Shown: in pieces, positions 32,641-60,504 of the stretch
Position numbering within the stretch: position 1 is the first letter of the stretch
Layout: each line of letters opens with the position of its first letter
From: Haliotis rubra
Taxonomy: Eukaryota
Direction: 5' to 3'
Length of the DNA: 64,000 nucleotides
Assembly: GCF_003918875.1 (NCBI RefSeq)
Contig: NW_025767492.1
Coordinates: 1 to 64,000, forward strand
The notes under the pieces: model-generated
What the model was told of the DNA's origin: nothing
Seen by the model: only the letters and a program-made list of their open reading frames with translations
Database searches by the model: none
Made by a program: the position numbers and the translations under genes

Positions 32641-33450
32641 TCAGTGCTCCTTTAACACGGCGACGACATCCCACATGTCTGTATTGCACACCTGTAGACT
32701 CTGCTGGAGGATAACCATCAGATTCCCGGCTGTAGCCTCCTGACCTTCCTTCCTCCTCCGCGTGTTCAACATGGCAAAGATCTGCAGCACACAGGTAGAG
32801 TGAGTCATCTTGCACCTCTGTACACACACATAAGTCAGCCCTAGACGGACGCCAACCGCCTCCCAACCTTCCCCTAGGTTCTCCGACACAAGCAGCAATG
32901 TCTTTTCTGTCAGGTATACGTTCTTCTCTTCCTCCGACAACTGATTCCGCCAGTCTGTATTTGAAGGGACAGGCTAGAATATACAGTAAAAGTTCTGATA
33001 AAGTATGATCAACCCAATGTTGCATGTAATTCAGCATTACTACATGAGAAATTTGTATACCTGCTCGGCAAGTGTTACCATAATCAAACAGTAGTGTACA
33101 TAACCATAAACAGTGACACTGTTAATGTGAATGCCTCATTCAATTTACGTTTGATTGTCTTTAAGGTCCTAGGTCCTCGGGTTTTAGGTCCTCCTCGGCA
33201 AGTGCTACCATAATCAAACAGTAGTTGACAAAACCATATACAGTGACACTGTTAATGTGAATCTCTCATTCAATTTACCAATTTACCACTTGGCCAAGTC
33301 TTCAGTTGTGTTTGGTGTGTTTACAGTGTACTTTTATGAATAACCACACCAAATATACATACATTAAGTTGTTAGATTAATTAATAAAGCCAATTATCCT
33401 ACCTTGTAAATTCTTCTGAAACAACAGCAAATAGCCCCCTTCGTTTGCAT
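32641..33450 (-). CDS. Death-domain protein family C copy 1, 126 aa (exons 33450-33403, 32973-32641)
   Basis: MQTKGAICCCFRRIYK|PVPSNTDWRNQLSEEEKNVYLTEKTLLLVSENLGEGWEAVGVRLGL.. with donor AAG|GTAGGA and acceptor TTCTAG|. The conserved helix-4 Trp is replaced by Arg. Confidence 0.75.
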
Positions 33451-34729
33451 GTCGGAGAACCGTCCTGTCCCAGGGAGGAAACACTTTATACGATGATTAC
33501 CTACTGGCCACTTTTCAGCGCCTGCACGTTTTGAGATACTGACTGCTAGTGACGAGCATTTAACAGTCCCCGAAGAAGCATGCTGTATTAATAGATCCAA
33601 ATCATTGCGACGCACGGAAGTTCAAAACCTTTCAATGGATCCGAAATGTGCTGCTTCAGATATGCTTGTTAAACCATTGTGTCAACAACGAACCTAATGG
33701 CTGTCATTATCAAAACCATCCAATCATTTCCAACTTATAGTATAAATTACCAGCAGATTACCAGATGAAACTGTGTAACGATCCGAAAACACAGACACAC
33801 TGATATGCTATCTTGTGTTAACGAGCATTAACTTACACGGATCTGAACTTTAACCATATTATGTATACACCTCGTAAAGTATTAATGTTCATTGTTGTGA
33901 TACAATATATACACGTCATACAGATATGAATGATCCTCAGAGATTAATAGGGCTGGCTAAAATGATCGATAATCGGAAATATGGTAGAACTTTTTCAGTT
34001 TTAACAAATGACTTAAATCATGGTCTGCTTCTAAATTATGTTCAGAGTGATGTTTTGTTAATGATCCATGCCAAAACATGTCACCACTCACTAGCGAAGA
34101 GAAATAGTCATTTCTGGCATTTTTGCTCAAAATTCCGATATTATCGATCGATATTTAGTTAACGATTACCAATCTCTATGATCTAAATCAAGAGCCAGTT
34201 CTACACCTTAATATATACGTTTTCAACACTATTTAGCCTGGTACGTCCTTTGGAACCTGTTTGACAGCTAATCAGAAATGATTATTATCTGGTTTTATGT
34301 TTATCATCATATTTACACCTAAATGATATGCTGATATATCACCTCTTTGCGAACACATGGTGCTATCTCTATTTGATAGTGATTCATAAACACATGCTGG
34401 TGATGTAGTTGAAACCATACAAGTGACTCTGCACTTGACAGGTTTCTGGGGGATGTGGAAAGCTTTTTGTCGGAATCCAACTAGGAATATAAGTTATGAA
34501 AATTGGAGACATCATATTTTGTCTTCAGACTTGCTGACTTGCTTGACAGAGGTCCCTGAACCCCACGGTGTTGGTGATCAAGTGATCAACAGCATGAGTA
34601 TCGATCTGCGCAATTGGGAAGTGATGACATGTGTCAACCAAGTCAGCGAGCCTGACCACCCTATCCCGTTGGTCGTCTATAACGACAAGCCTGAGTTACG
34701 GAAGATCAATATTGTTTGTCAACAACAAA

Positions 34730-35210
34730 GTAATGTCTAGTTTGGATCTGATATTTGTAGCGGATCCGAAAAATCAGTGTGTAACATTTGGGCACGCACG
34801 TTATGCACGTTACGTCAGTTATCTTCGTAGAAGGCATGACATGGTTAGTGAAATGATTCATACACTTAATGATACATGAATCATTTGAACGTTCCTGAAA
34901 CAAATGTATTTCTAACCATTTATTTTCAAGTCAAGCCGTTAAACGTATCACTTAATCCACACAGCAACAGATGAGGCCAGGTGTGTCAAAACAGCTCAAA
35001 CCCGGAAGTATTACCCTTTTTATTTCAATAAACTATAGAAACATATATGTTTATGTATTCATTGTATTAAGTTATAATTGTTATTGTGATATTGCTCGAT
35101 TTATTACATAGAATCATAGAAAGTCACAAACATCTATGCGATCACAGCATTCTCTACAAAAAGAGTGGTACTATTATATCTATGGTAGAATTTCTGTTGT
35201 GACGAATAAA
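34730..35210 (+). pseudogene. Family-B relic: upstream flank and intron kept, both exons deleted
   Basis: 35040-35183 matches the B intron (25271-25415). It is joined directly to upstream flank and to sequence lying 3' of the B stop codon. Confidence 0.7.
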
Positions 35211-35699
35211 AAACGCCCGTGTAAGATATATTTTTTAGAGAATTGTGTCAGGTCAACATTTTACGATACCGGCCATAAGAAGAGACCAGAAAACACTCTA
35301 CGTTTTTAGAAACGTTGTTGTTCCTCCATCAAAAGATTGTGATCCTTTGTGTGTCCCTGTCAGTGTCTATCTGTATCTAGCTTGTGCAGCTGTGTCATGG
35401 GCATCTCCCTGCTGCTGAAGCTGAAATATTACACACTGGAGATACGCCTGCTAACTGTTGACCTCTCGTTGTGTATTACAGTTAATCACTGTAATGACGA
35501 TCCGAACATTCTGACAATATGTCAGTGACAGGTTTTATGCTCGTCATCGATAAATCAGTCATGGTCACGACTGGGGACATAAGGGATCAGCTCTAAACAG
35601 TGTCCCTAGTTGAGGTCATAGCTGCATTATGTGTACGTAACCTTTAAGCGCACAGAGCATTTATTAGTGAATGATGCGCTATATAAATGCCATTATTAT

Positions 35700-38600
35700 G
35701 TTTTACAGATTAAAGATAGTATGCAGCAGAGAGGGTTCGGGTGATCCTGGCACAGTCAGGCTGGTAAGGCTCATCATCAGCTCAGGGCCCTTGCCCCCTC
35801 TACACGCAGCCCAGACAGCGAATGGGACTTCTCCCAGGAAACACTGCCTAGTCGAACCCACCAAGAACTTTCCGGAGAATATGAAGGCTCCCCAACACTG
35901 CAGCCTTCTGCATTACCCAGAGTGTCAGAAGGGCTGTGCTCCCGGTGGAGAACCCGGGAACTCTCCGGATCTGCGCCAAGAGATCAGGAGGTACCAAACC
36001 AAGGGCACCAAGAACAATGGGGAGCCTGACGACGGTGTACTTTGGGTGCAAGCGAGACATTTCAAAGGCGAGGTCTGCATATTTATCATGCTTTTCCTGA
36101 ATCTTGCCAATCACATTGGTGTCAAAAGGGACAGAAAACTCAATGATATATATAAATTCATTGGCTTTATCAAAAAGGACAAGATCAGGTTTGTTGGCTG
36201 GAATTCTTCTGAGGCTGTATATGGGCCTATTCCACAGAAGTTTGAAAGCATCATTTTCCATGACACCCTGGACATGTTCAGGGTCGTACCACGGATGGAC
36301 CTCGGAGTCAAAGCCACAGGCATGTCAGAGACGGTAGTAAAAGCAACGAGCCATGCCATCATGTCGTTTAAGATATGCTGTTTGTGCCAAGGAAGGGCAT
36401 CCACTGACAAGGTGTTGGACAGTCTCTGTGAATTCATTGCAAAGTCGACATTTCATGTTGATATTTTCTTTAAGAATCACATTTAGGCGATTGCGAGTGG
36501 GAAGTGACTGCTCCTGAGCAGCAAAAAAGAAGCCCTCAGTTTCACATTTAAGACCAGCCGACTTCATCCAGGCGAAAGAGTCGGTGGGATTTCTATTCTG
36601 TTCAACACACTGCATGTACACACGATGCAATGGTTTCTCAGAAAGCTTCTCCACAAAAGACCGACTCTGGGCAGACTTGGTGAAGGACTTCACCTGGTTT
36701 ACTCCCATCACTGTACCGTCCAGCAGTACATCGCCATCAACAAAATCAACCTCAAATCTCAGATTCTGTCCAACAACCTTGGCACGCTTAAAATAGCTCT
36801 GGAATTCCTTGCTTTCATCATGAGTCTTCACATGCATCACCAGAGGATCATCCGATAAATAAATATGTGCAAGAGTACACAATAAAATTCTATCATGAAG
36901 AGCCTCCACATTAATCAAACCCCGACCTCCAGAATTGATTGGCATGTATAAACGGTTAAGAGAGGAACGAGGGTGGTGGGCTCTATTATCAGACATGATC
37001 CTTCTGGTCAGACGGTCAAGACTCTGGATGTCTTGTTTTGTCCAATCAACTACTCCAAAGGAATAAGAAAGGACTGGCACAGCAAAAGTATTGGTGGCCT
37101 TGACCTTGTTTCGATCATTTAGCTCTGAGCTCCAGATTTTCTTTAAACGAGATTTGTACTCAGCCCGAAGTTTGTCTTGAATCTGGGCATTCTGGAGCTT
37201 ATCTCGACCTTGCATTCCAAGATAGGTGTAGGCCTGATCTTCCACAAGATGCTCAATAACTCCTCCCCCTTGTAACTTGACCGATCCGTCATTAGTTACC
37301 TTGCCCTCGTTTCAAATGAAGAGTATTACATTTGTCGAGTCCAAATGTCATGCCAATAATCATTAGAAAAGGACTCGACAAGGAGAACCTGCTCTTTCAA
37401 ATTGGAATCTCCTTTGGCAAGGAGCTCGATGTCATCCATGTAAAGGAGATGAGTAAGCGGTGTTAGGGATCTGTGCTGAGGAGGTCCGGGATGGTAACCC
37501 TCCTCTTTATTGAGCAGAAAGGTCAAAGGATTTAAAGACAGACAAAAAAGCAAAGGACTAAAGGAATCCCCCTGAAATATCCCCCTTCTGATTGGAATAG
37601 ATTCCGAAGTCTGCACCTGCCCTTGCGAGTACATCTCAAGTTGAGTCGACCAGCAACTCATTAAAGACTTGAGTAAATCAAGTAGTCGCTCAGGGACGTC
37701 AATACAATGAAGAGACTTTAGAATCCATTCGTGAGGGACAGAGTCGTATGCTTTTTTGTAGTCAATCCAGCACATGGAGAGGTTGCGGTGATATGTTTTA
37801 GCCTCTTCCAAAATCATTTTCTGTACAAGAAGTTGATCCTTGCACCCCCAACATCCCTTTCTTGCTCCCTTCTGCTCTCTGTAAATTATATCATTTAAAG
37901 AGCAGTAAGATGACACGAGGTTTGTCAAACACCCTGTGAATATTTTGTATTGTGTATTCAAACATGTGATAGGGCGGAAGTTTTTGGGATCAGTCAAGTC
38001 TCCTTTCTTGGGGAGAAGTATTGTGCGACCTTTGCAGAACCATGGAGGAACATCACCTGTGTCCACAAGAGTACTGAAACAGTGTAGTAATGGTGTTTGG
38101 ACACAGGGGAACAGTTTCCAATAACGGTTTCGAATGCCATCAGGCCCTGGAGCTGTATTATATTTGAACTTTTTTATAACACTTTTCAGGCAAACTGGTG
38201 AGATGTAACAGACAAACGACCTAGTTACTTTCTCATGCATTGCATGGCCATAATCACGGACCCATGGTGCTTCCAGGTTACAGTTGCCGGGTATAGACCA
38301 CAACTGTTTCCAGAACCTTTCATTGGCATCCATGGGAGGCCGTTTGTCATGTTCACCATCACCCTTTGTTTTCAGTTGCCTGTAGAAGTGCTTTTCATTG
38401 TTTCTAAAAAGTTTATTTTGTTTGATGAATTTATTTTTCTTTTCCCATTTTTTCTTTCTTTCAGTCCAAACCTTTATTCTTGCCTTCAGGGAATCGACAA
38501 TTTGGAGAAGTATCTTTTCTTTCGTTGTTTTGAATTTCAGTTTTAATTTTCTCCAAATTGCCTTTTGTCGTTTAGACATTGGATTCCCTGATGATCTTAA

Positions 38601-39564
38601 CTTCAGGCAAAGCTCTATCCAGGAAATGTATTTTCTAGTTTCTGTTAGTTTCACTTGAAACCGGTTTTTCTTTGGTGTATTGTTCTTAGTATTGGCTGTG
38701 TTTTCTTTGGAAACTGTGAAGTTCCTCCAAGGTTCGAGCGGCAGCATAGACACAACAATTAACTTCATGTAATGAACAGTCCGATGAAAGTTTCATAGAA
38801 ATAATGTCATTTAATAAATTAATTTCATTTTTGGGAAAAGATTCTGTTATTTGTTTAATTGGCCTCCGTTTTTCTAAAGGTAAATCAGATATTTCGTCAT
38901 AAATAGAATGAAACAAAATATACACAGGATGTTCGGAAAGATCTGCAACTGAGGAAGAAGAAGAGTGAGGATCCAAAATTTCGGGACCAACTGGCTCCGT
39001 GCCGGAAGAGTTTCCATCAGGAAGAGGAGAGAGGTTAACATGGACGTCCATCAGAAGTTTTGGGTCTGCTGCCACTTGAGCATTCTGCTCATGCAAAGGT
39101 TCCTGACGGGCACCAGTTATGGGCTGAACTGGCTCACGGGGCATGAGATTTTAAGCCGCCGGAATTGATCTCGGAGATTTTGCTCCGTCAGGAAAGCATA
39201 CATGGGCATGGCATTGTCCCAATGCAGCTTAAGCGACTTGCCGTTTATTCGTGGATTTGCAGGCCATCCTGTCGCTCTTGCACACTCTAGTAGTGTGGTT
39301 TTCAGATGGTTTGACCAAGATATTCTTGATCGGGTGCTGTGCCTTCCCCTGGGGCAAGTCCCATCTCCAGTAAGGTTGGTTTGACTACCGGAGGAAGGCT
39401 GACCGGGCTGCGGAGTTGAATGATGATATTCTCCTTGGCTTTCGGTAACCCAGTGTAAAACCAGCTTCGGGGGGGTCAGCCCTAGCTGGGTGATGTACGT
39501 TTAGTTCAGGGAATAAAATTCCCCTATCTAGGCCCACCACGGAGAGGCGTACATCATCAGGCCC
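35700..39564 (-). mobile_element. Full-length RLE-type non-LTR retrotransposon (R4/Dong-like), frameshifted
   Basis: RT (PGPDG, IDYKKAYDSV, GIFQGDSFSP, YMDD), CCHC finger (CRLC..ETVQHLVSGC) and restriction-like endonuclease (KPDLV..IIEFSVPFD). TSD CCATTATTAT at 35690-35699 and 39565-39574. Empty site at about 46130. Confidence 0.92.
39491..39564 (-). ncRNA. HDV-like self-cleaving ribozyme at the retrotransposon 5' end
   Basis: Folds by eye as P1 GGGCCU/GGGCCU (G1-U wobble), P2 UGAUGUAC/GUACAUCA, P3 GCC/GGU, L3 UCUCCGU, P1.1 CU/AG, a P4 hairpin and J4/2 ACUAA. G1 equals the TSD-defined element end. Confidence 0.75.
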
Positions 39565-39566
39565 CC

Positions 39567-39604
39567 ATTATTATTATTATTATTATTATTAATATTATTA
39601 TTAT
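39567..39604. repeat. (TTA)n microsatellite, tail of a short LINE 3'-end fragment (about 35645-35699)
   Basis: Uninterrupted paralog at 46085-46165: TAAGCGCACAGAGC..GCGCTATATAAATGCC(ATT)n. Confidence 0.8.
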
Positions 39605-42112: not shown

Positions 42113-42398
42113 TGGGCGTATATCACTTCCAATCGCCTTTCCAACACAATAAGTACCTCAAACGCCTTTCAATGGTCCAGCAGTTTTTATGAATGTACAT
42201 CGAATTTGTATCCTCTTCAAAGAGGTTTTTATGTATGCACGTTAACTGATGGATCCGAAGAATAATTCAACCAATGAGACCTGTCGAGTTATTCATGAGA
42301 ATTTCAGACCCCTGTCGGCGCATGTCCATTGGGAAACCAACACTGGACAGCTACGTCGCTCTCTCAGTTGACTCACTGGTCTTACTTACACAGGAAGG

Positions 42399-43594
42399 AT
42401 GAAGGAAGGGAACAACTTTTGTTCATCTGGTAGGCTATTTAGGATGGCTTTTCAGTGGCTAATATGCTATAGCCAAGAATATCACCAGGTACGTTATGCA
42501 TTGTTGACCTCTTCATTCAGATATTGTGTAAAGTGTATTTATATGTGTAAATGTGTATCTTCAGTCTCAGTCCAACTTAACTGCACTGTTAATGGTCGCT
42601 ACAACTACAATAACGTATAACGTACATAAGCTTTATGTAAACATCTCAATGTAGGATTATATCATATTTTTTACATACAGAGTCTTCACTATTTTACCTC
42701 GGATCCGGTTCATGCAGGTAGCCAAAGTAGTGTAAGTCCCCATGGTCCCTAGCATGGTGATCAGCCTTCAGTTGCTGGCGAAATATAGCTAATTTTTACG
42801 TTGTATTGTCCAAAAATAGTTCTCTACTTTTAAAGATATATGCTAGCTAGTTTTAACTCATTTTGTGATAATCTAGTAATTTTACTGTCCTTCGTTGACA
42901 GGGTTTTATATATTATATGTATGTATTATGAATTTAGAACTAGTTTTAGTCACGATATGGCTGAAATATTGCCAATGTGGCTTTAAATTTTAACTCACTC
43001 ACTCACTCACCTCGGATCCGAATATCTTCACACAGTCACTTCACGGGTCACATTTACATCCGGGTTCAACAAAAACCAACACCAGCATCACCTATTGTAA
43101 CACCATCATTACACGTGTACACTTGATGAATTCTTTTCTAATTATCTGCATATAGCTGTTCGCATTTCTTTTAAAACTGCATCATACGAACTTAGTGAAT
43201 ACTGTACAGAATATTCCATTGCCCTTTCTTTTACTTCAAAGTGCATTTACCTTTCTCAAAAAAAAAGATATCATTGTTTCAGGACAAGTGTTCAAGGGAC
43301 AAATGGACCAGTCATCTGACAGAAGAACAACGGATGGCTCCTGTGACAAAGAAGTCTGTGTTGCTGGTGTCGGAGTGCCTGGGCGAAGGTTGGGACACGG
43401 TCGGACTCCGACTGGGACTGTCCTATGCTTGTGTACAGAGGTGTAAGCTGCCTCGCTGTATGCTGGACAAGTGGAGGATGAAGGAGGGTTTGAAGGCTAC
43501 AGTGGACTTGCTGGTGAATGTGCTCCATGAGAGTTTGTATGCCTGTACAGTGGACATGTTTGCTGTAGTCAAATATTTTAAACACTCTGTTTGA
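42399..43594 (+). CDS. Death-domain protein family A copy 3, 133 aa (exons 42399-42488, 43283-43594)
   Basis: MKEGNNFCSSGRLFRMAFQWLICYSQEYHQ|DKCSRDKW... The acidic exon 2 is genomically deleted and the frame is preserved. Confidence 0.75.
42708..43008 (+). mobile_element. 5'-truncated (ACTC)n-tailed retroposon in the A3 intron
   Basis: 12-bp TSD ACCTCGGATCCG (42696-42707, 43009-43020). Empty site in the paralog at about 49135. Confidence 0.85.
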
Positions 43595-44763
43595 TGTTCA
43601 CAGCATACATCACCGGTAGGCGCTGCCAAAAAGAGGATAACATTTCTTCAAACCATTCACTGTGTTGCATTTGAATCTATAAAGTCCGTCATGTCTGAGA
43701 TTACTATTACTGGTCATATCCTTTCATCAATGTCCTGCGGCTAACTAATTTGGATTCATGGAAAAACATATATGATCAGTTTAATGATAACTCTTGGTGA
43801 TGATTTCTTACTACGGTTTAGAAAAAAAGATAAAGACTTCTCTGAATTGAAAAACTCTAATGTGATAAGAGTTAATCACTGTAAATTGACAAGCCTAACA
43901 TGGAATAAAACAAGTCATTTCATAAATGTACATTGAGCATTTTGGAGTACATGTAGTATTAGCATGTATTGTGTGTGCAGTTGGTTTCTTTTTCACAATG
44001 ATGTTGTTTCAATGTCACTGCTAACCAAAGATACGTATATTTATGTAGCGGATCAGAAGTATCAATGTAATATTTGGGCACGCATGTATGCACGTTACGT
44101 CATTCATCTTTGTAGAGGTCATGTCGTGGTTAGTGAAATTATCAATGCACTTAATGATACATGAATCATTTGAACGTTCCTGAAACAAATGTATTTCTAA
44201 ACATTCACTTTCAACTTGAGTCAAGGCGTTTAACGTAACAATTAATCCACACAACAACAGATGAGGTCAGGTGTGTCAAAATAGCTCAAACCCGGAAGTA
44301 TTTCCCTTTTTATTTAAGAAAACACACTAGAAACGGCCCACACTTTGCTTGTAAAGGGAAGCATGTATCGTAGATTATTGTCTTCTTATCATAAAAAACA
44401 TTCATGTTGGGTATGTTTAAAATTGGGCGAAATCACAATGAAAGTTTCTATCAGTAGTGATACAAACTGTTTACATACATTAAGATGCAAAATATTTATT
44501 TCTACTATTTCAAATTCAATGTTTCAAAAGTGGTCAGGTTAGTTACGAAGACATTTGATTGACCAAACACTCTTTCCCAATCATAGACAGGGTTAGAATG
44601 ACGTATCTATAAATAGTAACACGTCACAACTATTTCAAGTAAATCCGAAAATTGTGATCCGTAACGTTACCACAACCACTATCGCCTGCATGGGACATGT
44701 ATAACGTAACGAGCTGCCATTGAGCCCAGATGGTCTATTTCTTCAGGGCAGGACTGACTGAAC

Positions 44764-45355
44764 ATGATCCGTCGGAGATATTTTATGCAGAGAGATTTTA
44801 AGAGACGGTTTTCTTTATTGCTGCAGAGGATTTTCTGCTGCTATGAACAGTTTGAATTTCAGGTAGGACAAACATATATGTTTATGTATTTGTTGTATTA
44901 AGCTATAATTGTTATGGTTTTATTGCTCGATGTATTACATAGAAGCATTGCGCTTCAAAAACACCGAAACCATCATGATATTTCTAGCAAAATTGGTGCT
45001 ATCATATTTATATTTACAGCCATTATCCAGTGATGGTGGGTCAACAGTGCCTCTGCCTGCTGTTATTCAGAACTCTTGTGTCTCCGAGCAGACTCCACAG
45101 TGTGTAGCTGGGCATATTGGGGAGGGATTTGAAGCAGTGGCCATAAGACTGGGCCTACCAAAGGTGTTCATAGACAGGTGTAAGATGTCTCACTCCTCGC
45201 ATCACATGCAGGTGTTTCACATGATGTACACGTGGAGGCAGATAACTGGGACACAAGCTACGGTCAGGGTTCTGATGGATGTTCTGGCAGACTCTGTACA
45301 CGTGTGTGATGTTGATGTGGACGCCGTTGTAAGGCTGTTGAAGACAATGGAGTAA
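44764..45355 (+). CDS. Death-domain protein family B copy 2, 144 aa (exons 44764-44862, 45020-45355)
   Basis: MIRRRYFMQRDFKRRFSLLLQRIFCCYEQFEFQ|PLSSDGG..IGEGFEAVAIRLGLPKVFIDRCKMSH..QVFHMMYTWRQ..GTQAT, joined by a phase-0 GT/AG intron. Confidence 0.78.
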
Positions 45356-48835: not shown

Positions 48836-49868
48836 ATGAAGGAACGGAACATCTGTTGTTCATTTGGTCGGCTATTTAGGATGGCTTTTCAGTGGCTACT
48901 ATGCTGTAGCCAAGAATATCACCAGGTACGTTATGCAATGTTGACATTTTTATTCAGATATTGTGTAAAGTGTATTTATATGTGTAAATGTGTGTCTATC
49001 AGTCTCAGGCCAACTTAACTGCACTGTTAATGGTCGTTTCAACTACAATAACGTATAACGTACATAAGCATTATTTAAACATCTGAATGTAGGATTATAT
49101 CATATTTTTTACATACAGAGTCTTCACTATTTTACCTCGGATCCGAATATCTTCACACAGTCACTTCACGGATTACATTTACATCCGGATTCAACAAAAA
49201 CCAACACCAGCATCACCTATTGTAACACCATCATTACACGTGTACACTTGATGAATTCTTTTCTAATTATCTGCGTATAGTTGTTCGCATTTGTTTCAAA
49301 ACTGCATCATACGAATTTAATGAATTCTGTACTGAATATTCCATTGTCCTTTCTTTTACTTCAAAGTGCATTTACCTTTCTCAAAAAAAACATATCATTG
49401 TTTCAGGACAAGTGTTCAAGGGACGACTGGACCAGTCATCTGACAGAAGAACAACGGATGGCTCCTGTGACAAAGAAGTCTGTGTTGCTGATGTCGGAGT
49501 GCCTGGGCGAAGGTTGGGAGATGGTCGGACTCCGACTAGGACTGTCCTATGCTTGTGTACAGAGGTGTAAGCTGCCTCACTGTATGCTGGACAAGTGGAG
49601 GATGAAGGAGGGTGTGAAGGCTACAGTTGGCGTGCTGGTGAATGTGCTCCAGGAGAGTGTGTATGCCTGTACAGTGGACATGTTTGCTGTAGTCAAATGT
49701 TTTCAACACTCTGTTTCATGTTCACAACATACATCACCGGTAGGCGCTGCCAAAATGAGGATCACATTTCTTCAAACCATTCACTGTGTTGCATTTGAAT
49801 CTATAAAGTCCGTTACGTCTGAGATTACTATTACTGGTCATCTCCTTTTATCAATTTCCTGCGGCTAA
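48836..49868 (+). CDS. Death-domain protein family A copy 4, 183 aa (exons 48836-48925, 49407-49868), C-terminal read-through
   Basis: MKERNICCSFGRLFRMAFQWLLCCSQEYHQ|DKCSRDDW... Exon 2 is deleted, and the stop TGA of copy 3 is TCA here. Confidence 0.72.
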
Positions 49869-51097: not shown

Positions 51098-51702
51098 ATG
51101 TTCCGTCAGAGATTTTTTATACAGAGAGTTTTTGAGAGACGATTTTTTTTTCTCTTCAGAGGATTTTCTGCTGCTATGGACAGTTTGAATATCAGGTGGG
51201 GCCTTTAGGAAAAAAACATATATGTTTATGTATTTATTGTATTAAGTTACAATTGTTATTGTGATGTTGGTCGATTTATTACATTGAGTCATTGTACGTC
51301 ACAAACATCTATACCATCATGGCATTTTCTACAAAAAGAGCGGTACTATTATATCTATGTTTGCAGCCACTATCCAGCGATGGTGGGTCAACAATACCTC
51401 TGACTGACGCTATTCAGGACTCCTGTCTCCCAGAGCAGCTTCTACTGCGTGTAGCTGAGCATATTGGGGAGGGATTTGAAGCATTTGGCATAAGACTGGG
51501 CCTACCCAAGGCGTTCATAGACAGGTGTAAGATGTCTCACTCCTCGCATCACATGCAGGTGTTTCACATGATGTACACGTGGAGGCAGTTAGCTGGGACA
51601 CAAGCTACGGTCAAGGTTCTGATGGATGTTCTGGCAGACTCTGTACACGTGTGTGATGTTGATGTGGACGCCGTTGCAAGGCTGTTGAAGACAATGGAGT
51701 AA
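51098..51702 (+). CDS. Death-domain gene family B copy 3 (exons 51098-51195, 51367-51702); exon 1 is 1 nt short in a T9 run
   Basis: DD exon is intact and near-identical to B1. Exon 1 is 98 nt vs 99 in B2 and the donor is altered to GTGGGG. Could be a pseudogene or a homopolymer assembly error. Confidence 0.6.
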
Positions 51703-52219: not shown

Positions 52220-52302
52220 ACACTGGAGATACGCCTGCTAACACTGGAGATACGCCTGCTAACACTGGAGATACGCCTGCTAACACTGAAGATACGCCTG
52301 CT
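52220..52302. repeat. 21-bp minisatellite x4
   Basis: Paralog of 26259-26381. Confidence 0.88.
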
Positions 52303-53617
52303 GAGATAACTGCTGAGCTCTCGCTGTGTATAACAGTTACACGAGTGTCGCCGCAATGACGATCCGAACATTCTGACAATATGTCAGTGACAGGTTTTAC
52401 GCTGGTCATTGATAAATCTGTCAGGTCACCACTGGGAACAACAGGAATTGCCTTCATATAGTGTCCCTAGTTGAGGTCATAGCTGCAAAACGTCTTCATA
52501 TAAATGTATACGTAGCCTGTATATAAGTGTTAAATTGATATATTGCTTACATATATAATTATACTTTATGTTATAGAATATGAATAAAACATCATGTACA
52601 ATGAGTATTTTGTTCTTGAAAATATGCGGAAGGGTATTTATTAAAAAAATATTTAAGGTGTTTATACAAACATGTCGTTGTTGCTATCCTATCGATAGCT
52701 TTTATGAGTTGTCGGGCTCTGGTTTTAAGGATCCGAGAAATTACACATGTGACCTTCACGAATGATCGATGATAACAACACATGTGAACCTGATCCGAAA
52801 ATTACTCTCACAAACATTAGTGCTTCCATTACATATACACGCATATGGAGAGGCCCCGTAACTCGAACTCATCTCACCTCTAGACAATGCATCATTGTTG
52901 CATTATTTGCAAAGGAGTGGTCTCGAGGCTATGGAGATGATCCCGAGATTCTAAATGCTTGAGGAAGGTAAAATGATATTTTTCGGATTTAATCACAACT
53001 CTCAGATTGCTGCTAAAATCGGACCCATTGTTTGTATTGTGAACATTTATTGTTTGTAAACTATAAACTAGATTCGTTTAGGGTGAAAGAATCATTTTCA
53101 TGGACAGTTAGCTGTCTTGACAAACAAGTCATGCAGCTGAAAGATTTACACAATCCGAAACTACAACAGAACACATGACACAGGACTCGTTATATGATCC
53201 GAACTTTGCGAATCCGAGTCCATGAGCTGCAAATTAACTATACCTCAGAAGATGTTGACTGGAACAAGCAAAGTAGTGGCTGAAATGTCCTCAGCGGATA
53301 ACGATCAATGCTGTCCTCGCGTTCATCTTACTAGTTCGGAGTGATTCCAGTTTTGCAGTACTGGCCCACTTAGACGCCATGCCACAATGTAACATGGTCA
53401 CACCAGTCACACACAGTATACCAGCCGGTGCTTATTAACTAAATACCGGGCGCCAGCAGAGTAACAACAAGAGCCGTCTTTCAGTGTATTTCTATGTTTG
53501 GCAGATGAGGATCGAACCACGAACCATCGACTCTCCGGGAAGACGCCCTGTCCACTACACCACGAAGGCAGACATGTATAGCGACATGAGGGACAATATA
53601 GTTTATAGGGAATTATT

Positions 53618-53853
53618 GTGAGTGAGTGAGTGAGATTAGCTTTACGCCGCACTCAGCAATATTCCCGCTCAGGTGGTGGTCTGTAAATAATCGAGTCTGG
53701 ACCAGACAATCCCGTGATCAACTGTATGAACATCGATGTACGGATTTGGATACGTGTCAACCAAGTCAGCGAGCCAAACCACCCGATCCCGTTAGTCTCC
53801 TCTTACGACAAGCATGGGTTACAAAAGACCAATTCTAGCTGGATTTTCACGGG
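53618..53853 (-). mobile_element. (ACTC)n-tailed SINE
   Basis: Same position as 27733-27970 within the large duplication. Confidence 0.85.
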
Positions 53854-55179
53854 TATAGGAAATTATACTTCATATGTATTGTCATATGGTATGACACACA
53901 GACATCAACTGAACATCTAATAGTGCATTAAAAACCACTAAACATATACTACAATATATAGACTCAAAGCAGTCGAGTCAGTTATAAGCACGATCCGACA
54001 AATAAGTTGACAGGAGATAACATTATCACAAGGGACATAGAACCCTCCAGCTTATAGCTGTCTCCAATAGCAACTGTGACTATTGTCATGGATAGATATG
54101 ATTCATATAGGTTTTACATATTTTCTGTTAATGAATGTGCATTACACAGTTTCAGCTTGGAAGTCACATTTAAAAGCTTTAGTCCTGTCTGAAGAAACAT
54201 CCAGTTTAAATGTTATCAATTGTAAGTGTTGGGGTATTTCTATTTTGCTTTGTAGGGTAATTTTGTGTGTGTGTCCGTGCGTGCGTGTGTGTGGTGTTTG
54301 GTTCTGGTTTGGTATGTTTTGTTTTTTTTTTTGTTTGTTTGTTTTACTTGTTTCATAAAAGTGTGTGATTGGGGTATGGGTGTCACGTGACGTTATGGGG
54401 AAGTTCAAGAACCCCATCAGAATTGGAATTAACTGAAATGGTCACTGACACAAGTCATCATGACATTACATGCTGACCAAATAATATAGTAGATGGAAGA
54501 GATCCACTCACTTCGCGAAACCAAATCAGCTGTAATAGCAAGTTCATGTACTTCACTTCCAAAATATGGTGCTGGGATGAGATAACATCCTGCTGATCCT
54601 AGTTCATATCACTGTCATGAACCATCCGTGTTATCACAGCAGATATTTACAGATTGGCTGTGATTAGCTGGCGGATCCGAAGAATATTTTAGCCCTGGGT
54701 TTATGTATATGCAATTTAAAGACCCGTCTAAGCACCATCAATCAGTTGGGAAATCCGACAAATATGGGGCTTGAATTTACATGTACTTATTGACCTGAGT
54801 GTATATAACCGCCAATCTGTCCAGCACAATAAGTACCTGAAAAACCTTTCATTGATGCGGCAGTTTTTATAAATGTCCATCAAATTTGTATCCATATTTT
54901 CAAAACACCTATCCATATTTTAAAAACACTCGACTTAATAAAAGTCCTCTTCAAAGAGGTTTTCATGTATGCACGTCAACTGGTGGATCCGAAGAATGAT
55001 TCAACCAATGAGAGCTGTCGAGTTATTCATATGCATTTCACAGACCCCAGTCGGCGCATGTCCACTGAGACACCAACACTGGACAGCTACGTCGCTCTCT
55101 CAGTTGACTCAGTGGTCTTACTTACACAGGGAGGTAGAAGGAACGGAACAACTGTTGTTCATTTGGTCGGCTATGTAGG

Positions 55180-56773
55180 ATGGCTTTTCAGTGGCTAATA
55201 TGCTGTAGCCAAGCATGTCACCAGGTACGTTGTTGACATACTTATACAGTCAATGATTGCGTGAAGTGTAATTTGTATGTACGTAAATGTAAGAAAACGT
55301 CCCAATGTCTCTGTTCATTTTGTCTTACTATCCACCTTGAACTATTAATTGATCGTTACACGTAACTACAATAACATAGTAAGCTTTATGTAAACATCAG
55401 AATTGAGGATTCTATCATATTTTGTACATACAGAGTATTCCCTGTTTTACCTCGGATCCGAATATCTTCACACAATCACGTCACGGGGACACATATTTTA
55501 ATCCCCGTTCTACAAAAAACAAATACCATAATTTGTTTAAACGCAAATGTGTCTCTCCCCGAAAATCTAAATGTGTCTAAACGCCCCACTGTCTCTGTGT
55601 CTGTTCATCTTGTGTCTCTGTCCATTCTGAACTATTAACTGATTGTTATACTTAACTACAATGACATTAAAGCTTTATGTATACATCAGAATGTAGGATA
55701 ATATCCCATGTTTTACATACAGAGTTTTTACTGACATACCGAGGATCCGAATATCTTCACGAAGTACACGTCACAGGGACACATATTTAAATCCGGGTTC
55801 AGTGAAAACAAATACCAGCATCACCTATTGTAACACCATCATAACACGTGTATGCTTGATCAATCTTTTTTCCCCTTATCTGCGTATCGAGCATTGTCAA
55901 TGCAGGTCATATTGTGCACATCTCGCATCATTTTATGATCTTATTGTATTATGATCAGCAAATCTTTACCAAGAGACATAGACATAATTACCTCCCTTGC
56001 ATCACAGGTTTTGAAGGCGACTGATGAGTTGGATGAGGAGATTACAAGGAAGGACATAACAGATGTAATGCCGGATCGTCGTGTAAGTTGAGTGTAGAAT
56101 ACAGCACAGAATGTTCCTACCCATGTACAATTACATTTCTACTGATTGTTATATGTTTAACATGTACTTATGTTTCAATGTGGTGGACATACATGGGACA
56201 AAAACCTTCATCTTTAATAGGAATTATAAGACAACATAACAACTCCAACAATCAGCAAAAGGAAAATAACAGCCCTGAGTGTTATGAATGACTTAAACGT
56301 GATATGTTCATACAATCAGTTGTCACAATTACACAGTTTCGTATAGTTATTCGCATTTGTTTCAAAACTGCATCATACGAACTTAATATGTGCTGAACAT
56401 TTCATTGCCCTTACTTTTACTTCAAAGCACATTTTCCTTTCTCAAAATGAACATATCATTGTTTCAGTGTTCAAGAGAGGACTGGGCCAGTCATCTGACA
56501 GAAGAACAACGGATGGCTCCTGTGACAGAGAGAGTTGTGTTGCTGGTGTCGGAGTGCCTGGGTGAAGGTTGGGAGACGGTCGGACTCCGACTGGGACTGT
56601 CCTATGCTTGTGTACAGAGGTGTAAACTGCCTCGCTGTATGCTGGACAAGTGGAGGATGAAGGAGGGTGGGAAGGCTACAGCGGACGTGCTGGTGAATGT
56701 CCTCCAGGAGAGTGTGTATACCTGTACAGTGGACATGTTTGCTGTTGTCAGGTGTTTTCAACACACTGCCTAA
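55180..56773 (+). CDS. Death-domain gene family A copy 5 (exons ending 55224, 56008-56082, 56468-56773); original start lost
   Basis: The ATG is replaced by TAG at 55135. An in-frame ATG at 55180 gives MAFQWLICCSQACHQ|VLKATDELDEE..|CSREDW.. (141 aa). Confidence 0.65.
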
Positions 56774-58584
56774 TATTCACAACATATATCACCGGTAGGC
56801 GCTGCAAAGATGAGGATCACATTTGTTCAAGACCATTGACTGTGTCGCATCTGGATGTATGAAGAACATGTACAATGGAACTTAATTACGTTAGAGATTA
56901 CTATTACTGATCATCTCCTGTGTTAAGTTATGTCTAAGTTATGAAGTTACTAACCTGTTGCAAAATACCTGTTGCTGCTATTTGTGTGTATATATACAGA
57001 TTTTCACTTGGGTTGGTATCATTTCCAACAACTAATTCATTTAACGTTGGAACTAATTTGGGTTCAGGGCACATTGATATTTGATCAGTTTAGTGACCAT
57101 TGCTGGTGAACATTTGTTACTATGATTTGATATATTTACGGAAACCTTCACTCGAATTAAAGACGTCTCTGAATTGTAAGACGCTAATGTGACAAGAGTT
57201 CAAAATTTGTCAGTTTACAGGCATTTCCGGAAATATCATGTCATTTCAGAAACAGATATTGAGTATTTTGAGTATAAAGTATGCTGTTGTTTGTTTTTGT
57301 TTATCTCGTCAATGTCAACGTCAATGGTTGTGTGCGTTGATATGAGTGATTTAGATCCGGGACTTCAGCAACCAATCCTTGTCGTTAGAGGCGACTAACG
57401 GGATTGTGTGGCCAGGCTCGCTGACTTGGTTGATACATGTCTTTGTGTACCAAATGCGTAGATGACTCGATTACTCACAGACCGCTGTCATTAAGTTTGC
57501 ACATCGCTGAGCGTAAACAACAAATAAAGAAGCGTTAGTTTGGATCCGATATTTGTGTCTCATTCGAAAAGTCGGTGTAATGTATGTGCACTCATGCGTA
57601 CACATAGCATCTAACACCAACGAAGAGATACGTAGAGATTTCGCACAGTTTAAAACACTACTTTAATATGACAGCGTGATGACGGGAAGTACATTATGCC
57701 ACTCAAAATATACTTCATGGATGCATGTACGTCATTAAGAATGCATACATTATTCGATCTATTTCAATATCATAGATGAAAAGTAAATGTTCTGATCAGC
57801 ATAATTCACAATTTGTAATCTAATGTTAATTATGACATCTACAAAAAATATGTAATTTAGTCAAATGCATTTAACCTGACATATGCTATATTGTCGAACA
57901 AAATTATTTTATACCGAAACAGAAGTTCCTTTGGTTCTGGGATCCGATTGAAACTAACACTGTTTGGTTATTGCAAAACATCAGCAGTCGCCGTATATTA
58001 TCAGAAACATGTTTGTCATTTATGCAACGCACATTAGTGAAATGTTGTAGAAAATTATCAAAAAGCATATCAACCCAAGTTCACTAACAGTTGGGTTTCT
58101 ATAACATGTCGGGGCCATCATCAAAAAGATAACAAAGGATGCCCAGACATTATTTTCATTTCTAAATAATGATCCACTGAATTTCACAAGACAGCATGTG
58201 CTGTATATTATTTTTATATACAGAGTATCTGAAACAGCAATAGTTACAAGCAAACATTACCAAAGCAGTTCTGAATCCGAATCTTATGGAAAATATTACA
58301 CAGACATTAATTGTGATCATAACAATAAAAAACAATATAATTCTTTAGAAAAAATAATGAACTACTGATTTTCATAAACAGAAGCGACAAAACCTTTTCC
58401 ACATTAATAAGAAATCTCAGCTAAAAAGCAGAGTCGATGATACAATTGTGACTGAATCATGAGTATGTGTAAGCTTCAGCAGAATTCTAGCTGTACGATC
58501 TTGTTTGTAAACAATCGAGTCTGGACCAGACAATCAAGTGATTATCACCATGCGATACGATGACAGAGCATGGGTTTATGCATT

Positions 58585-59490
58585 ATTCTAAGATGCTTAG
58601 CGCTTAGAACAATCGAACAAAAAATACATTATCAGACAATAAAGGTATAGTTTTTTGATGACGTAACAATTGAATGACGTTATCCCGTCACTGCGCTATT
58701 CTAGTGTGCCCCCTCGTAATCGAACCATTTTACATTACGTCACAATGTAAGCGACGTCACGATGCATGTCAGTTGTCATCGCCTCGTACAACCTCATACA
58801 GTAAACTACTGCGTTGCATCCCGTTTTTGGTTTGCAGTTGCTTCACTCACCTAACATCACTGGTGGAAACATCACGTTTATGTTTTCTGACGTTTTAAAT
58901 GTCTCAATTCGACTCGTAAGTTTTCAGCGACACGGTAACGTTCGCAATGTTTACATTCCACAATGCAATCGTGGAATGTCGCTAGACTACTCAGCTTCGT
59001 CTGGATGTACTGATCTAAACATACGTTGGTAGTAGAAATGCGACGTTCACATGGTTTACGTTAATCACAGATGTAATTAAAATCCTTTATAGAAGATATT
59101 TAATCCGAACGTAAACCGTCATGAAACTGTTTATCATTTGTTTTTCTGGTAACGTTCGTCTTAACGTAGGGGGGCAGACACATCAATAGAACAGCGCGCC
59201 CGTTAGCCCTGTGCGAGGATTCTTAATTTAGGTCACCGACACCGTCGTTTGTTTTCTGCCTTAAATTAATCGTAATTATCCTTAGAAAGAGTTAAATTTG
59301 CCATCTTAGAAAAGAAATACAGTTCACTCTACCACCATGTATAGTGTAATAAAACACACTTTCTCCCTGAACTATTATGACGTTAAAGCACTCGGACGCA
59401 AGCGTCCTCGTGCTTTAACTATAATAGTTCAGGGCAAAAGTGTGTTGTATTACTATACATGGAGGTAGAAACGAACTATGACTTTCTTAA
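58585..59490. mobile_element. About 900-bp non-coding insertion ending in an about 180-bp imperfect palindrome
   Basis: Absent from the paralog at about 32460. Hairpin 59312-59488 is centred on GGACGCAAGCGTCC. Confidence 0.75.
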
Positions 59491-59671
59491 AGTATGAAAA
59501 TAATTGATGATACCAGGTGTTTCCTGTCCCACCCGATATAAATATATGCAAAGCGTAGTCAAATTGGTAACCTGAAAATATTTCGGAACGTATGGTATAA
59601 GTCAAAATAGTGACTTCCATCGGACATCGTTGTTGTCACTGATACGTTGAGTTGAGGTGTGAGTTAGATCA

Positions 59672-60504
59672 TCAGTGCTCCTTCAACACGGCGACGACAC
59701 CCCACATGTCTATATTGCACACCTGTAGACTCTGCTGTAGGATCATCATCATATTCCCCGCTGTAGCCTCCTGACCTTCCTTCCTCCTCCACGTGTTCAA
59801 CATGGCAAAGATCTGCGTCACACAGGTAGAGTGAGTCATCTTGCACCTCTTTACACGCACATAAGTCAGCCCTAGACGGACGCCCACCGCCTCCCAACCT
59901 TCCCCTTGGTTCTCCGACACAAGCAGCAATGTCTTCTCTGTCAGGTGTTTTTCTCTTCCTCCGACAGCTGATTCCGCCAGTCTGTATTTGAAGGGACAGG
60001 CTAGAATATACAGAAAAGTTCTGATAGAGGTATGATCAACCCAATGTTGCATGTAATTCAGCATTACTACATGAGAAATTTTTATACCTGCTCGGCAAGT
60101 ACTACCATTATTAAATAGTAGTGGACAAAACCATATACAGTGACGCTGTTAATGTGAATCTCTCAATCAATTTACGTTTAATTGTTTTTTTATGTCCTGG
60201 GTCCTAGGTCCTCAGGGTTTAGGGACTGCTCGGCAAACACTACCATTACTAAATAGAAGTGGACAAAACCATATAAAGTGACACTGTCATTGTCAATATC
60301 TCATATAATGATTTCTTTCCGCTTTACTTCTTGTCTGGATACCGTGGCCAAATCTTCAGTTGTGTTTGGTGTGTTTAAAGTGTACTTTCATGAATAGCCA
60401 CGCCAAATATATATTCGTTAAGTGTTTAGATTAATTAATAAAGCCAATTATCCTATTTTGTAATTTCTTCTGAAACAACAGCAAATAGCCCCCATCGTTT
60501 GCAT
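59672..60504 (-). pseudogene. Death-domain gene family C copy 2 (exons 60504-60457, 60000-59672)
   Basis: Exon 1 reads MQTMGAICCCFRRNYK but the donor GT is changed to AT. A 4-nt deletion in exon 2 shifts the frame relative to C1. Confidence 0.75.

What the first reader, a model, noticed from the sequence alone, without database searches (positions are those of the whole stretch)
33403..60504. Acylation-type N-termini in all three families, including a MGAICCCF myristoyl/palmitoyl-like motif
Seen: exon 1 peptides are otherwise unalignable, but all are basic and aromatic with Cys residues, usually a CC cluster. A: MKERNNCCLFCRLCRMTFQWLICCSQ. B: MIRRRYFMQRDFKRRFSLLLQRIFCCY. C1: MQTKGAICCCFRRIYK. 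C2 has an ATG at 60495 in strong context (ACGATGG) giving MGAICCCFRRNYK. Known: Met-Gly plus nearby Cys and basic residues is the SH4-type dual-acylation signal. Inference: the exon is a swappable membrane-addressing module. The Arg-rich B leader might instead target mitochondria.
Basis: partly seen in the sequence, partly recalled or inferred. Interest (0 to 1): 0.7.

Follow-up and report, generated by a model that had tools for sequence, protein, structure and literature searches.

The report
Cysteine-cluster leaders on abalone death-domain genes
A tandem cluster of tiny abalone (Haliotis rubra) death-domain genes each starts with a short first exon carrying a conserved double or triple cysteine next to basic and aromatic residues, most likely a fatty-acid (palmitoyl) membrane anchor, but the eye-catching MGAICCCF "myristoyl" start lies in a broken copy, behind another start codon.

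Summary
The window is Haliotis rubra DNA with a birth-and-death array of 126-159 aa death-domain (DD)-only genes in three families (A, B, C). The quoted exon-1 peptides are all present and match NCBI gene models.

**The leaders are coding and constrained.**
- A leader: ATG, frame and 90-nt length are kept in four Haliotis species, with no indels although the flanks have many.
- B leader: kept in H. rufescens and H. cracherodii.
- C leader: as conserved among three H. rubra paralogs (94-98%) as the DD exon, while the intron and upstream are about 86%.
- An adjacent Cys pair 6-7 residues before the exon end is retained everywhere.
- The AlphaFold model puts residues 1-12 outside the DD fold.

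**The MGAICCCF headline fails in this window.**
- C2 has a destroyed splice donor (GT to AT) and a 4-nt frameshift in the DD exon.
- An in-frame ATG lies 9 nt upstream (MQTMGA...).
- Intact C1 reads MQTKGA.
- An intact third copy (C3, another contig) does carry MQTMGAICCCF.

A related abalone DD-only family starts with a canonical MGNYVSCW or MGNIVSYW.

Verdict: palmitoyl-type anchoring is plausible but untested. SH4-type myristoylation is at most a minor isoform. No RNA evidence could be obtained. Another first-stage note of this scan reports a tri-cysteine DD-only cluster elsewhere in this genome.

The parts
29253..29342 (+). A1 exon 1 (30 codons, MKERNNCCLFCRLCRMTFQWLICCSQACHQ), donor CAG|GTACGT
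   Evidence: Equals the N-terminus of P0005, LOC124260713.
29821..29895 (+). A1 exon 2 (25 codons, acidic linker with an in-frame Met)
30286..30600 (+). A1 death-domain exon
   Evidence: Pfam Death hit; translation
33403..33450 (-). C1 exon 1 (16 codons, MQTKGAICCCFRRIYK), donor AAG|GTAGGA
   Evidence: Equals the N-terminus of P0004, LOC124260715.
32641..32973 (-). C1 death-domain exon
   Evidence: Pfam Death on P0004. AF2 model. Foldseek top match RAIDD DD.
44764..44862 (+). B2 exon 1 (33 codons, MIRRRYFMQRDFKRRFSLLLQRIFCCYEQFEFQ). An out-of-frame upstream ATG lies at 44730.
   Evidence: Equals the N-terminus of P0001.
45020..45355 (+). B2 death-domain exon
60457..60504 (-). C2 exon 1 (MQTMGAICCCFRRNYK, internal ATG at 60495). 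The donor is mutated to AAA|ATAGGA.
59672..60000 (-). C2 death-domain exon with a 4-nt deletion between 59947 and 59946. This gives an in-frame TGA at 59943-59941.
55135..55224 (+). A4 exon 1. The first codon is TAG instead of ATG, and the NCBI model P0006 starts at the internal MAFQWLICCSQACHQ.
56466..56773 (+). A4 death-domain exon (intact)
48836..48925 (+). A3 exon 1 (MKERNICCSFGRLFRMAFQWLLCCSQEYHQ). The A3 copy has no exon 2.
42399..42488 (+). A2 exon 1 (MKEGNNFCSSGRLFRMAFQWLICYSQEYHQ). One Cys of the pair is lost.
51098..51195 (+). B3 exon 1: 98 nt with a 1-nt deletion, so the conserved ATG is out of frame with IFCCY. The DD exon at 51367-51702 is intact.
25128..25262 (+). B1 exon 1. The conserved ATG (25162) is frameshifted by two 1-nt insertions. 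An upstream ATG at 25128 reads into ...GIFCCYGQFEFQ and is used in NCBI isoform X1 (P0003). The DD exon at 25423-25758 is intact.

Best explanation
The stretch is a tandem, segmentally duplicated array of small death-domain-only genes in Haliotis rubra. Each has a short 5' coding exon of 16-33 codons spliced in phase 0 to a RAIDD/PIDD-like death domain.

The leader is an unstructured N-terminal tail. Its one feature shared by all families is an adjacent Cys pair or triplet preceded by hydrophobic residues and surrounded by Arg/Lys and Phe/Tyr/Trp. It lies 6-7 residues before the exon junction.

Most likely (inferred, not shown) this is a membrane-anchoring module of the GAP-43 / Cav-beta2a kind. 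Basic-aromatic residues would give first contact with an acidic membrane, and DHHC enzymes would then S-palmitoylate the Cys cluster. That would hold the death domain at the cytosolic face of a membrane, where it could nucleate or block death-domain assemblies under receptors.

N-myristoylation is not the mechanism for any intact gene in this window. MGAICCCF needs initiation at a second ATG, and here it occurs only in the broken copy C2. The intact paralog C3 on another contig could make a myristoylated minor isoform by leaky scanning.

Shown: gene structures, coding constraint, conservation of the Cys cluster, the DD fold, and a disordered leader in the model. Inferred: lipidation, membrane location and signalling role.
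For: **Identity**
- H. rubra; the A1, B2 and C1 models equal NCBI proteins.
- DD: Pfam PF00531 above cut-off for A, B and C. Nearest PDB sequences are PIDD DD and CRADD. The AF2 model has pLDDT 87, and Foldseek's top match is RAIDD DD at TMt 0.85.

**Leader lies outside the fold**
- Residues 1-12 have pLDDT below 50.

**Coding constraint**
- A exon 1 has 0 indels in 90 nt against asinina, rufescens and cracherodii. The upstream 200 nt has 5-6 gap events and intron 1 has 18.
- A exon 1 identity is 0.81 and 0.74, against introns at about 0.75 and 0.59.
- ATG and frame are kept.
- B leader ORF is kept at 99 nt in rufescens and cracherodii, with the pattern M-F/I-R-R-R...K-x-R...F-C-C.
- C exon 1 is 0.94-0.98 identical among C1, C2 and C3, like the DD exon (0.94-0.95). 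Intron and upstream are 0.85-0.88. My Poisson estimate: 3 substitutions seen against about 10 expected, p about 0.01.

**Cys cluster retained, with positional turnover**
- ICCS, LCCS, SCCC and SGCC in A. IFCCY, FFCCC and IFCCC in B. ICCCF in C. CGCCF in the 43%-identical paralog P0010.

**The start codon must come from exon 1**
- B and C DD exons have no in-frame Met before mid-domain.

**A sister family has a true acylation start**
- An abalone DD-only family has canonical N-myristoylation starts, MGNYVSCW... and MGNIVSYW..., on a 14-codon exon 1. Lipid-type leaders are therefore a theme of these genes.
Against: - No RNA or protein evidence was obtained. The only runs holding the stretch are DNA, with even intron coverage and no exon joints. 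Transcription start sites and the start codon used are therefore unknown.
- B2 has upstream out-of-frame ATGs.
- dN/dS of the A and B leaders is 0.3-1.1 on very few sites. Apart from the CC-containing 3' half, the peptide is only weakly constrained.
- Leaders are the damaged part in A4, B1 and B3, whose DD exons stay open.
- One H. cracherodii B paralog (P0002) has a leader without Cys (MAKEES), so the anchor is not obligatory.
- S-palmitoylation has no strict consensus and cannot be predicted reliably from sequence.
- No C ortholog outside H. rubra was found.
Confidence: 0.5

Rival explanations
1. SH4-type dual acylation. The C-type leader would be translated from the internal ATG, giving MGAICCCF. 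Gly2 would be N-myristoylated and the Cys residues then palmitoylated, as in Lck or Fyn.
For: - The internal ATG has the best context (caaacgATGg).
- By my own reading of PROSITE pattern PS00008, recalled and not run as a tool, G-A-I-C-C-C fits G-{EDRKHPFYW}-x(2)-[STAGCN]-{P}.
- The same MQTMGAICCCF leader is in the intact paralog C3, with a GT donor.
- A sister family has true MGN starts.
Against: - An in-frame ATG lies 9 nt upstream in C2 and C3. Ordinary scanning would then give MQTMG, which NMT cannot use.
- C1, the only intact C gene in the window, has Lys instead of that Met.
- C2 has no usable donor and a frameshifted DD exon.
- The A and B leaders have no Met-Gly.
Confidence: 0.12
2. 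The leaders have no addressing function. They would be short N-terminal extensions supplied by whatever promoter-proximal exon carries an ATG, evolving almost freely, with the Cys-rich look a by-product of TGY-rich sequence.
For: - dN/dS is 0.3-1.1 in the A and B leaders.
- Leaders are broken in A4, B1 and B3 while their DD exons stay intact.
- P0002 and P0009 are modelled without the leader.
- Exon 1 is far less conserved than the DD exon in A (0.74-0.81 against 0.92).
Against: - No indels in the A leader across three lineages, despite indel-rich flanks.
- The C leader is as conserved as the DD exon, while its flanks drift.
- The adjacent Cys pair is kept in every intact leader of four families, at a fixed distance from the junction.
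- The CCF-RR-Y motif is shared by C1 and P0010 at only 43% overall identity.
Confidence: 0.18
3. The Arg-rich B leader is a mitochondrial or other organelle presequence, or a nuclear/nucleolar basic signal, rather than a lipid anchor.
For: - Net charge is +5 (B2) and +8 (rufescens), with few acidic residues.
- Hydrophobic moment is moderate, 0.36-0.55.
- The M-F/I-R-R-R start is conserved.
Against: - The leader is very aromatic, with 7-8 Phe/Tyr.
- It ends in the same FCC(C/Y) cluster as the A and C leaders, which are not presequence-like.
- B2 carries Asp11, Glu28 and Glu31.
- No targeting predictor could be run here.
Confidence: 0.12
4. The Cys clusters serve metal binding, a disulfide or redox switch, or partner binding rather than acylation.
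For: A1 has 7 Cys and a His in 30 residues.
Against: Only one to three Cys are conserved across species: asinina A keeps C14, C23 and C24. There is no conserved CxxC or CxxH spacing. The cluster shifts position (SGCC against ICCS), which suits acylation better than a metal site.
Confidence: 0.06

Closest known systems
GAP-43 (MLCCMRRTKQ) and calcium-channel beta2a (MQCCGLVHRRR) N-terminal dual-palmitoylation motifs (from my own knowledge)
   Same: A short N-terminal tail with adjacent Cys, flanked by hydrophobic and basic residues. There is no transmembrane helix and no Gly2. The C1 leader MQTKGAICCCFRRIYK looks very much like these.
   Different: Here the cargo is a death domain. In A and B the cluster sits 23-26 residues from the N-terminus, after a basic-aromatic stretch. 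Acylation is untested.
SH4 domains of Src-family kinases (Lck MGCGCSS, Fyn MGCVQC)
   Same: Cys and basic residues close to the N-terminus. The hypothetical MGAICCCF form and the sister family MGNYVSCW would fit myristoyl plus palmitoyl anchoring.
   Different: No intact gene in the window starts Met-Gly. In C2 and C3 the MG is preceded by an in-frame ATG. C1 has Lys in place of that Met.
TRAM/TICAM2, the N-myristoylated TIR sorting adaptor. See the MyD88-family adaptor review found (PMC13564108).
   Same: A small adaptor made of one homotypic-interaction domain plus an N-terminal lipid anchor that sets where signalling complexes form. This is the role proposed here.
   Different: TRAM carries a TIR domain, not a death domain, and is myristoylated, not palmitoylated. 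There is no sequence relation.
RAIDD/CRADD and PIDD death domains (PDB 2o71, 2of5)
   Same: Best sequence and structure matches of the DD part. NCBI names some relatives 'CRADD-like'.
   Different: The abalone proteins have no CARD, ZU5 or UPA part, only leader plus DD. Identity is 23-34%. Family A lacks about 9 residues between helices 3 and 4.
MARCKS effector domain (basic-aromatic membrane-binding cluster; from my own knowledge)
   Same: The B leader alternates Arg/Lys with Phe (RRRYF..RDFKRRF). This composition binds acidic lipids.
   Different: The B leader is shorter, N-terminal and followed by a Cys cluster. No phosphorylation switch is evident.

Membership tests
Death domain (Pfam PF00531, death-fold superfamily) | Profile match above the curated threshold | tested here: met
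   P0004 scores 24.2, P0005 23.0 and P0001 24.3 bits against a cut-off of 22.6. P0010 scores 44.7. Exon ORFs were tested.
Death domain (Pfam PF00531, death-fold superfamily) | Helical bundle fold that superposes on solved death domains | tested here: met
   AF2 model: pLDDT 87, with residues 24-125 above 90. Foldseek: RAIDD DD 2o71 at TMt 0.85 and rmsd 1.8; PIDD DD at 34% identity.
SH4-type dual acylation signal (N-myristoyl Gly2 plus palmitoyl Cys) | Gly directly after the initiator Met of the translated protein | tested here: not met
   C1 starts MQTKG, A1 MKERN and B2 MIRRR. In C2 and C3, MG follows an in-frame ATG 9 nt upstream.
SH4-type dual acylation signal (N-myristoyl Gly2 plus palmitoyl Cys) | The gene that carries the motif is expressible | tested here: not met
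   C2 has donor AT instead of GT and a 4-nt deletion that gives a stop. This applies to the window copy only. C3 on L009 is intact.
SH4-type dual acylation signal (N-myristoyl Gly2 plus palmitoyl Cys) | Small or uncharged residue at position 3, Ser/Thr/Ala/Gly/Cys/Asn at position 6, and Cys within the first 10 residues | tested here: inconclusive
   By eye, MGAICCCF would satisfy the PROSITE-type pattern, but only if the internal ATG is used. No NMT predictor was available.
N-terminal S-palmitoylation cluster (GAP-43 / Cav-beta2a type) | Adjacent Cys in an N-terminal tail, flanked by hydrophobic and basic residues, with no TM helix | tested here: met
   Sequences. Composition: net charge +1 to +8 and mean hydrophobicity about 0. 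By eye no leader has a hydrophobic stretch long enough for a TM helix. The leader is disordered in the model.
N-terminal S-palmitoylation cluster (GAP-43 / Cav-beta2a type) | Cys cluster conserved in orthologs and paralogs | tested here: met
   A: four species and six H. rubra copies. B: three other species. C: three paralogs plus P0010.
N-terminal S-palmitoylation cluster (GAP-43 / Cav-beta2a type) | Thioester-linked fatty acid shown on the Cys residues | not testable with these tools
   Needs acyl-biotin exchange or click-chemistry labelling.
Mitochondrial presequence (B leader) | Positively charged amphipathic helix with few acidic residues and a processing site | tested here: inconclusive
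   Net charge +5 to +8 and muH 0.36-0.55. B2 has three acidic residues. Cleavage motifs and predictors were not run.

The most novel reading that the evidence does not exclude
Abalone have evolved a whole class of lipid-anchored death-domain-only adaptors. A short exchangeable first exon would supply either a palmitoyl CC/CCC cluster (families A, B, C and P0010) or a true myristoyl MGNxxS(C) start (the 'CRADD-like' 138-aa family). This would pre-position RAIDD/PIDD-like death domains on membranes, as a natural death-domain counterpart of the myristoylated TIR adaptor TRAM. Rapid gene birth and death and leader swapping would tune where death-domain signalling complexes form.
Probability: 0.4. 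Interest if true: 0.6.

Novelty: new variant of a known kind. Interest (0 to 1): 0.42.

Why it matters
Death-domain signalling depends on where oligomers nucleate. Known DD adaptors reach membranes through receptors or lipid-binding partners, not through their own lipid anchor.

A lineage-specific, rapidly duplicating set of self-anchoring DD-only proteins would be a new way to wire or damp immune and apoptotic signalling in a mollusc of aquaculture importance. Abalone also have unusual antiviral signalling components (highlights of PMC11103948, found).

It also offers a simple test system: 16-33-residue leaders fused to a reporter. As it stands the claim is sequence-based, and the most striking motif in the window sits in a pseudogene-like copy.

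Tried and rejected
1. **RNA evidence.** The look-up of sequencing runs found only three holders from one study. Laid on 28700-33700, they cover introns and intergenic DNA evenly with short contigs and show no exon-exon joints, so they are DNA. The guessed RNA run held only a high-copy repeat.
2. **C orthologs.** A word-based search with the C1 DD exon found only C1 itself. The exhaustive search gave the H. rubra paralog P0010 and then the A and B families. No C exon was found in the H. cracherodii, H. rufescens or H. asinina loci fetched. The tools offer no eukaryote DNA search.
3. **Common origin of the C leader and the MGN leader.** The DNA alignment of exon 1 plus flanks is poor, at 64% mean column identity with few invariant columns. 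I treat this as unproven.
4. **Loss of TATAAA upstream of C2 as a pseudogene sign.** Rejected, because intact C3 also has TACAAG there.
5. **L009 as an allelic copy of the C2 block.** Rejected, because identity is only 87-92%.
6. **The 50-codon upstream extension in the NCBI model of C3.** It evolves like intron (0.85-0.87). C1 has no ATG there.
7. **Zinc-finger reading of the Cys-rich A1 leader.** Rejected, because most of its Cys are not conserved.
8. **Literature searches for lipid-anchored DD-only proteins.** Nothing relevant turned up.
9. **Spliced models.** Exons were searched by reference, and full-length proteins were taken only as returned by the database.


Full report
**What the stretch is**

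The window is Haliotis rubra (blacklip abalone) DNA. Exon translations match NCBI proteins from a 507,806-bp contig at 100%.

From about 21.8 kb to 60.5 kb it holds a tandem array of small death-domain (DD) genes.
- Families A and B lie on the + strand and family C on the - strand.
- Repeat units are about 6.3-7 kb, and a segment of about 26 kb is duplicated: B1-A1-C1 against B3-A4-C2.
- A non-LTR retrotransposon interrupts the array. Its reverse-transcriptase ORFs are at 36325-38768, - strand.

Pfam scores every DD exon as Death (PF00531) just above threshold. The nearest solved sequences are the PIDD and CRADD death domains. An AlphaFold model of C1 (P0004, 25-sequence alignment) has mean pLDDT 87. 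Its best Foldseek match is the RAIDD DD, at TMt 0.85 and rmsd 1.8.

**Gene models**

| Gene | Strand | Exons | Product |
|---|---|---|---|
| A1 | + | 29253-29342, 29821-29895, 30286-30600 | P0005, 159 aa |
| B2 | + | 44764-44862, 45020-45355 | P0001, 144 aa |
| C1 | - | 33450-33403, 32973-32641 | P0004, 126 aa |

All introns are phase 0 with GT-AG ends. The B and C DD exons have no in-frame Met before the middle of the domain, so exon 1 (or another upstream exon) must supply the start codon. A exon 2 does hold an in-frame Met, and one H. rubra paralog (P0009) is modelled from it.

**Check of the observation**

All four quoted peptides are present at the stated places. The A example lies at 29253, outside the given span, but other A copies are inside it. 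The leaders are Cys-rich, with 12 Cys in 79 residues for A1, B2 and C1 together. They are basic (net +3 to +5) and aromatic.

In fact the Cys pair sits 6-7 residues before the exon end in every family:
- A: LICCSQACHQ|
- B: IFCCYEQFEFQ|
- C: ICCCFRRIYK|
- P0010: CGCCFYRRYQ|

MAFFT places these in the same columns.

**Are the leaders coding and constrained?**

*Family A*
- The ATG, the frame and the exact 90-nt length are kept in H. asinina, H. rufescens, H. cracherodii and H. rubra A1, A2 and A3, and in A5 on another contig.
- Against asinina and rufescens, exon 1 has no gap events. The 200 nt upstream have 5-6 and intron 1 has 18.
- Exon 1 identity is 0.81 and 0.74, against about 0.75 and 0.59 for introns and 0.92 for the DD exon.
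- dN/dS is 0.3-1.1 on about 16 synonymous sites, so the peptide as a whole is loosely constrained.
- The 3' half, F-x-W-L-x-C-C-x-Q-x-x-H-Q, is nearly invariant. Every lineage keeps two adjacent Cys even where the position shifts (ICCS, LCCS, SCCC, SGCC).

*Family B*
- The conserved ATG opens a 99-nt ORF in H. rubra B2 and in rufescens and cracherodii: MFRRRVFKQRGIKGRCSFFLRKFFCCCGHLEYQ.
- The H. asinina copy has a stop three codons before the exon end, and a 124-nt deletion in its DD exon.

*Family C*
- No ortholog was found outside H. rubra. Three paralogs could be compared: C1 and C2 here, and C3 on contig QXJH01001211.1 (locus L009).
- Exon 1 is 0.94-0.98 identical, like the DD exon (0.94-0.95). 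The intron and the 150 nt upstream are 0.85-0.88.
- By my estimate that is three substitutions where about ten are expected, p about 0.01.
- The H. rubra paralog P0010, only 43% identical overall, still has ...CTLCGCCFYRRYQ|.

In the structure model, residues 1-12 have pLDDT below 50 and the DD starts near residue 24. The leader is therefore a free tail.

**The MGAICCCF motif**

The letters are right, and the context caaacgATGg is strong. But C2 is not a working gene as it stands:
- The donor after exon 1 is AAA|ATAGGA, where C1 and C3 have AAG|GTAGGA.
- The DD exon lacks 4 nt, which gives TGA at 59943-59941.
- No protein model for C2 turned up in the search with the C1 DD exon.

An in-frame ATG also lies 9 nt upstream (60504), so ordinary scanning gives MQTMGA..., which N-myristoyltransferase cannot use. 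The intact C1 has Lys (AAG) in place of that Met.

New here: C3, a third paralogous block and not an allele (87-92% identity), is intact and carries the same MQTMGAICCCFRRNYK. The motif therefore exists in a live gene, but again behind the upstream ATG. A myristoylated form is possible only through leaky scanning. I rate that at about 0.1-0.15.

The NCBI model of C3 starts another 50 codons upstream. That stretch evolves like intron, and C1 has no ATG there.

**Support from a sister family**

The exhaustive protein search found abalone DD-only proteins of 138-149 aa, named 'CRADD-like' by NCBI for some H. rufescens and H. cracherodii members. They begin MGNYVSCWSGFGYR| or MGNIVSYWSRFRYQ|, encoded by a 14-codon first exon. 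By my reading, these are canonical N-myristoylation starts (Gly2, Ser6), one with Cys7.

One member exists with and without this exon (P0054 and P0015). Those isoforms are predictions that I could not check with reads.

**Most likely mechanism**

The leader is a membrane anchor. Basic and aromatic residues would give electrostatic and hydrophobic contact, and the hydrophobic-flanked Cys pair or triplet would be S-palmitoylated, as in GAP-43 or the calcium-channel beta2a subunit (my own knowledge). That would tether a RAIDD/PIDD-like death domain to the cytosolic face of a membrane.

Shown:
- the gene structures
- the coding constraint on exon 1
- the conservation of the Cys cluster
- the DD fold
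- a disordered leader in the structure model

Inferred:
- acylation
- membrane location
- an adaptor or decoy role

Confidence is about 0.5.

**Evidence against, and rivals**

- No RNA data could be obtained. The runs that hold the stretch are DNA.
- B2 has upstream ATGs, including an overlapping out-of-frame one at 44730.
- Leaders are the damaged part in A4 (ATG replaced by TAG), B1 (two 1-nt insertions) and B3 (a 1-nt deletion), while their DD exons remain open.
- A4 can still start at MAFQWLICCSQACHQ (P0006), which keeps the conserved half.
- One H. cracherodii B paralog uses a Cys-free MAKEES exon.
- The B leader could be an organelle presequence (net +5 to +8).
- A neutral-extension reading is weakened, but not excluded, by the indel-free A exon and the C exon conservation.

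**Novelty**

I found no paper on lipid-anchored DD-only proteins. The nearest known analogy in function is the myristoylated TIR adaptor TRAM. I class this as a new variant of a known kind, resting on sequence evidence only.

**Limits**

- I searched exons by reference and used database proteins as returned.
- An N run (assembly gap) in locus L005 was left as it is.
- Another first-stage note of this scan (s1-352143) reports a tri-cysteine DD-only cluster on another piece of this genome. I reached P0010 (locus L006) through my own search and cannot say whether it is the same locus.

Noticed in passing
window 35200-39600 (- strand ORFs 36325-37245 and 37326-38768): A non-LTR retrotransposon (RVT_1 and zf-RVT hits) is inserted between C1 and the next A unit.
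   Followed up: no
window 18499-19218 (+) and 61202-61630 (-): DDE_3 transposase fragments flank the death-domain array on both sides.
   Followed up: no
window 32633-33037 (-) and 59672-60064 (-): In C1 an alternative frame is open for 134 codons across the whole DD exon, starting at an ATG in the intron. In C2 the 4-nt deletion joins the start of that ORF to the DD frame. The result is a 130-aa ORF with a Pfam Death hit but without the Cys leader. This could be chance or a rescue of the copy.
   Followed up: partly
window 32752-32760 (- strand, C1 residues LNTRRRK): C1 has Arg where nearly all relatives, including C2 and C3, have the near-invariant Trp of the DD (LNTWRRK; W88 column in alignment A3).
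   Followed up: no
window 31038-31371 and 32207-32707: In the DNA runs these bins reach summed contig depths of 10^4 to 10^6, against a few hundred elsewhere. They are very high-copy repeats between A1 and C1 and in the 3' flank of C1. The first also appears in the small run guessed to be RNA.
   Followed up: no
window 25128-25262 joined to 45020-45355: NCBI isoform X1 of LOC124260714 (P0003) joins the B1 first exon to the B2 death-domain exon about 20 kb away. It skips the B1 DD exon, A1, C1, the retrotransposon and A2. It is either real long-range splicing or an artefact of paralog mis-mapping.
   Followed up: partly
alignment A3; A-family DD exons such as window 30286-30600: Family A death domains lack about 9 residues between helices 3 and 4 relative to B, C and other relatives (KLPH---------CML).
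   Followed up: no
L002-L004 (H. asinina, 6.4-kb tandem units): H. asinina has many near-identical A genes in a 6.4-kb tandem array. Each unit also holds a dead B copy, with a leader stop and a 124-nt deletion in the DD exon.
   Followed up: partly
window 42399-43594 and 48836-49868: The A2 and A3 copies have no counterpart of the 75-nt acidic exon 2, so they would be two-exon genes like B and C. The A3 DD ORF runs on past the usual stop (49281-49868).
   Followed up: partly
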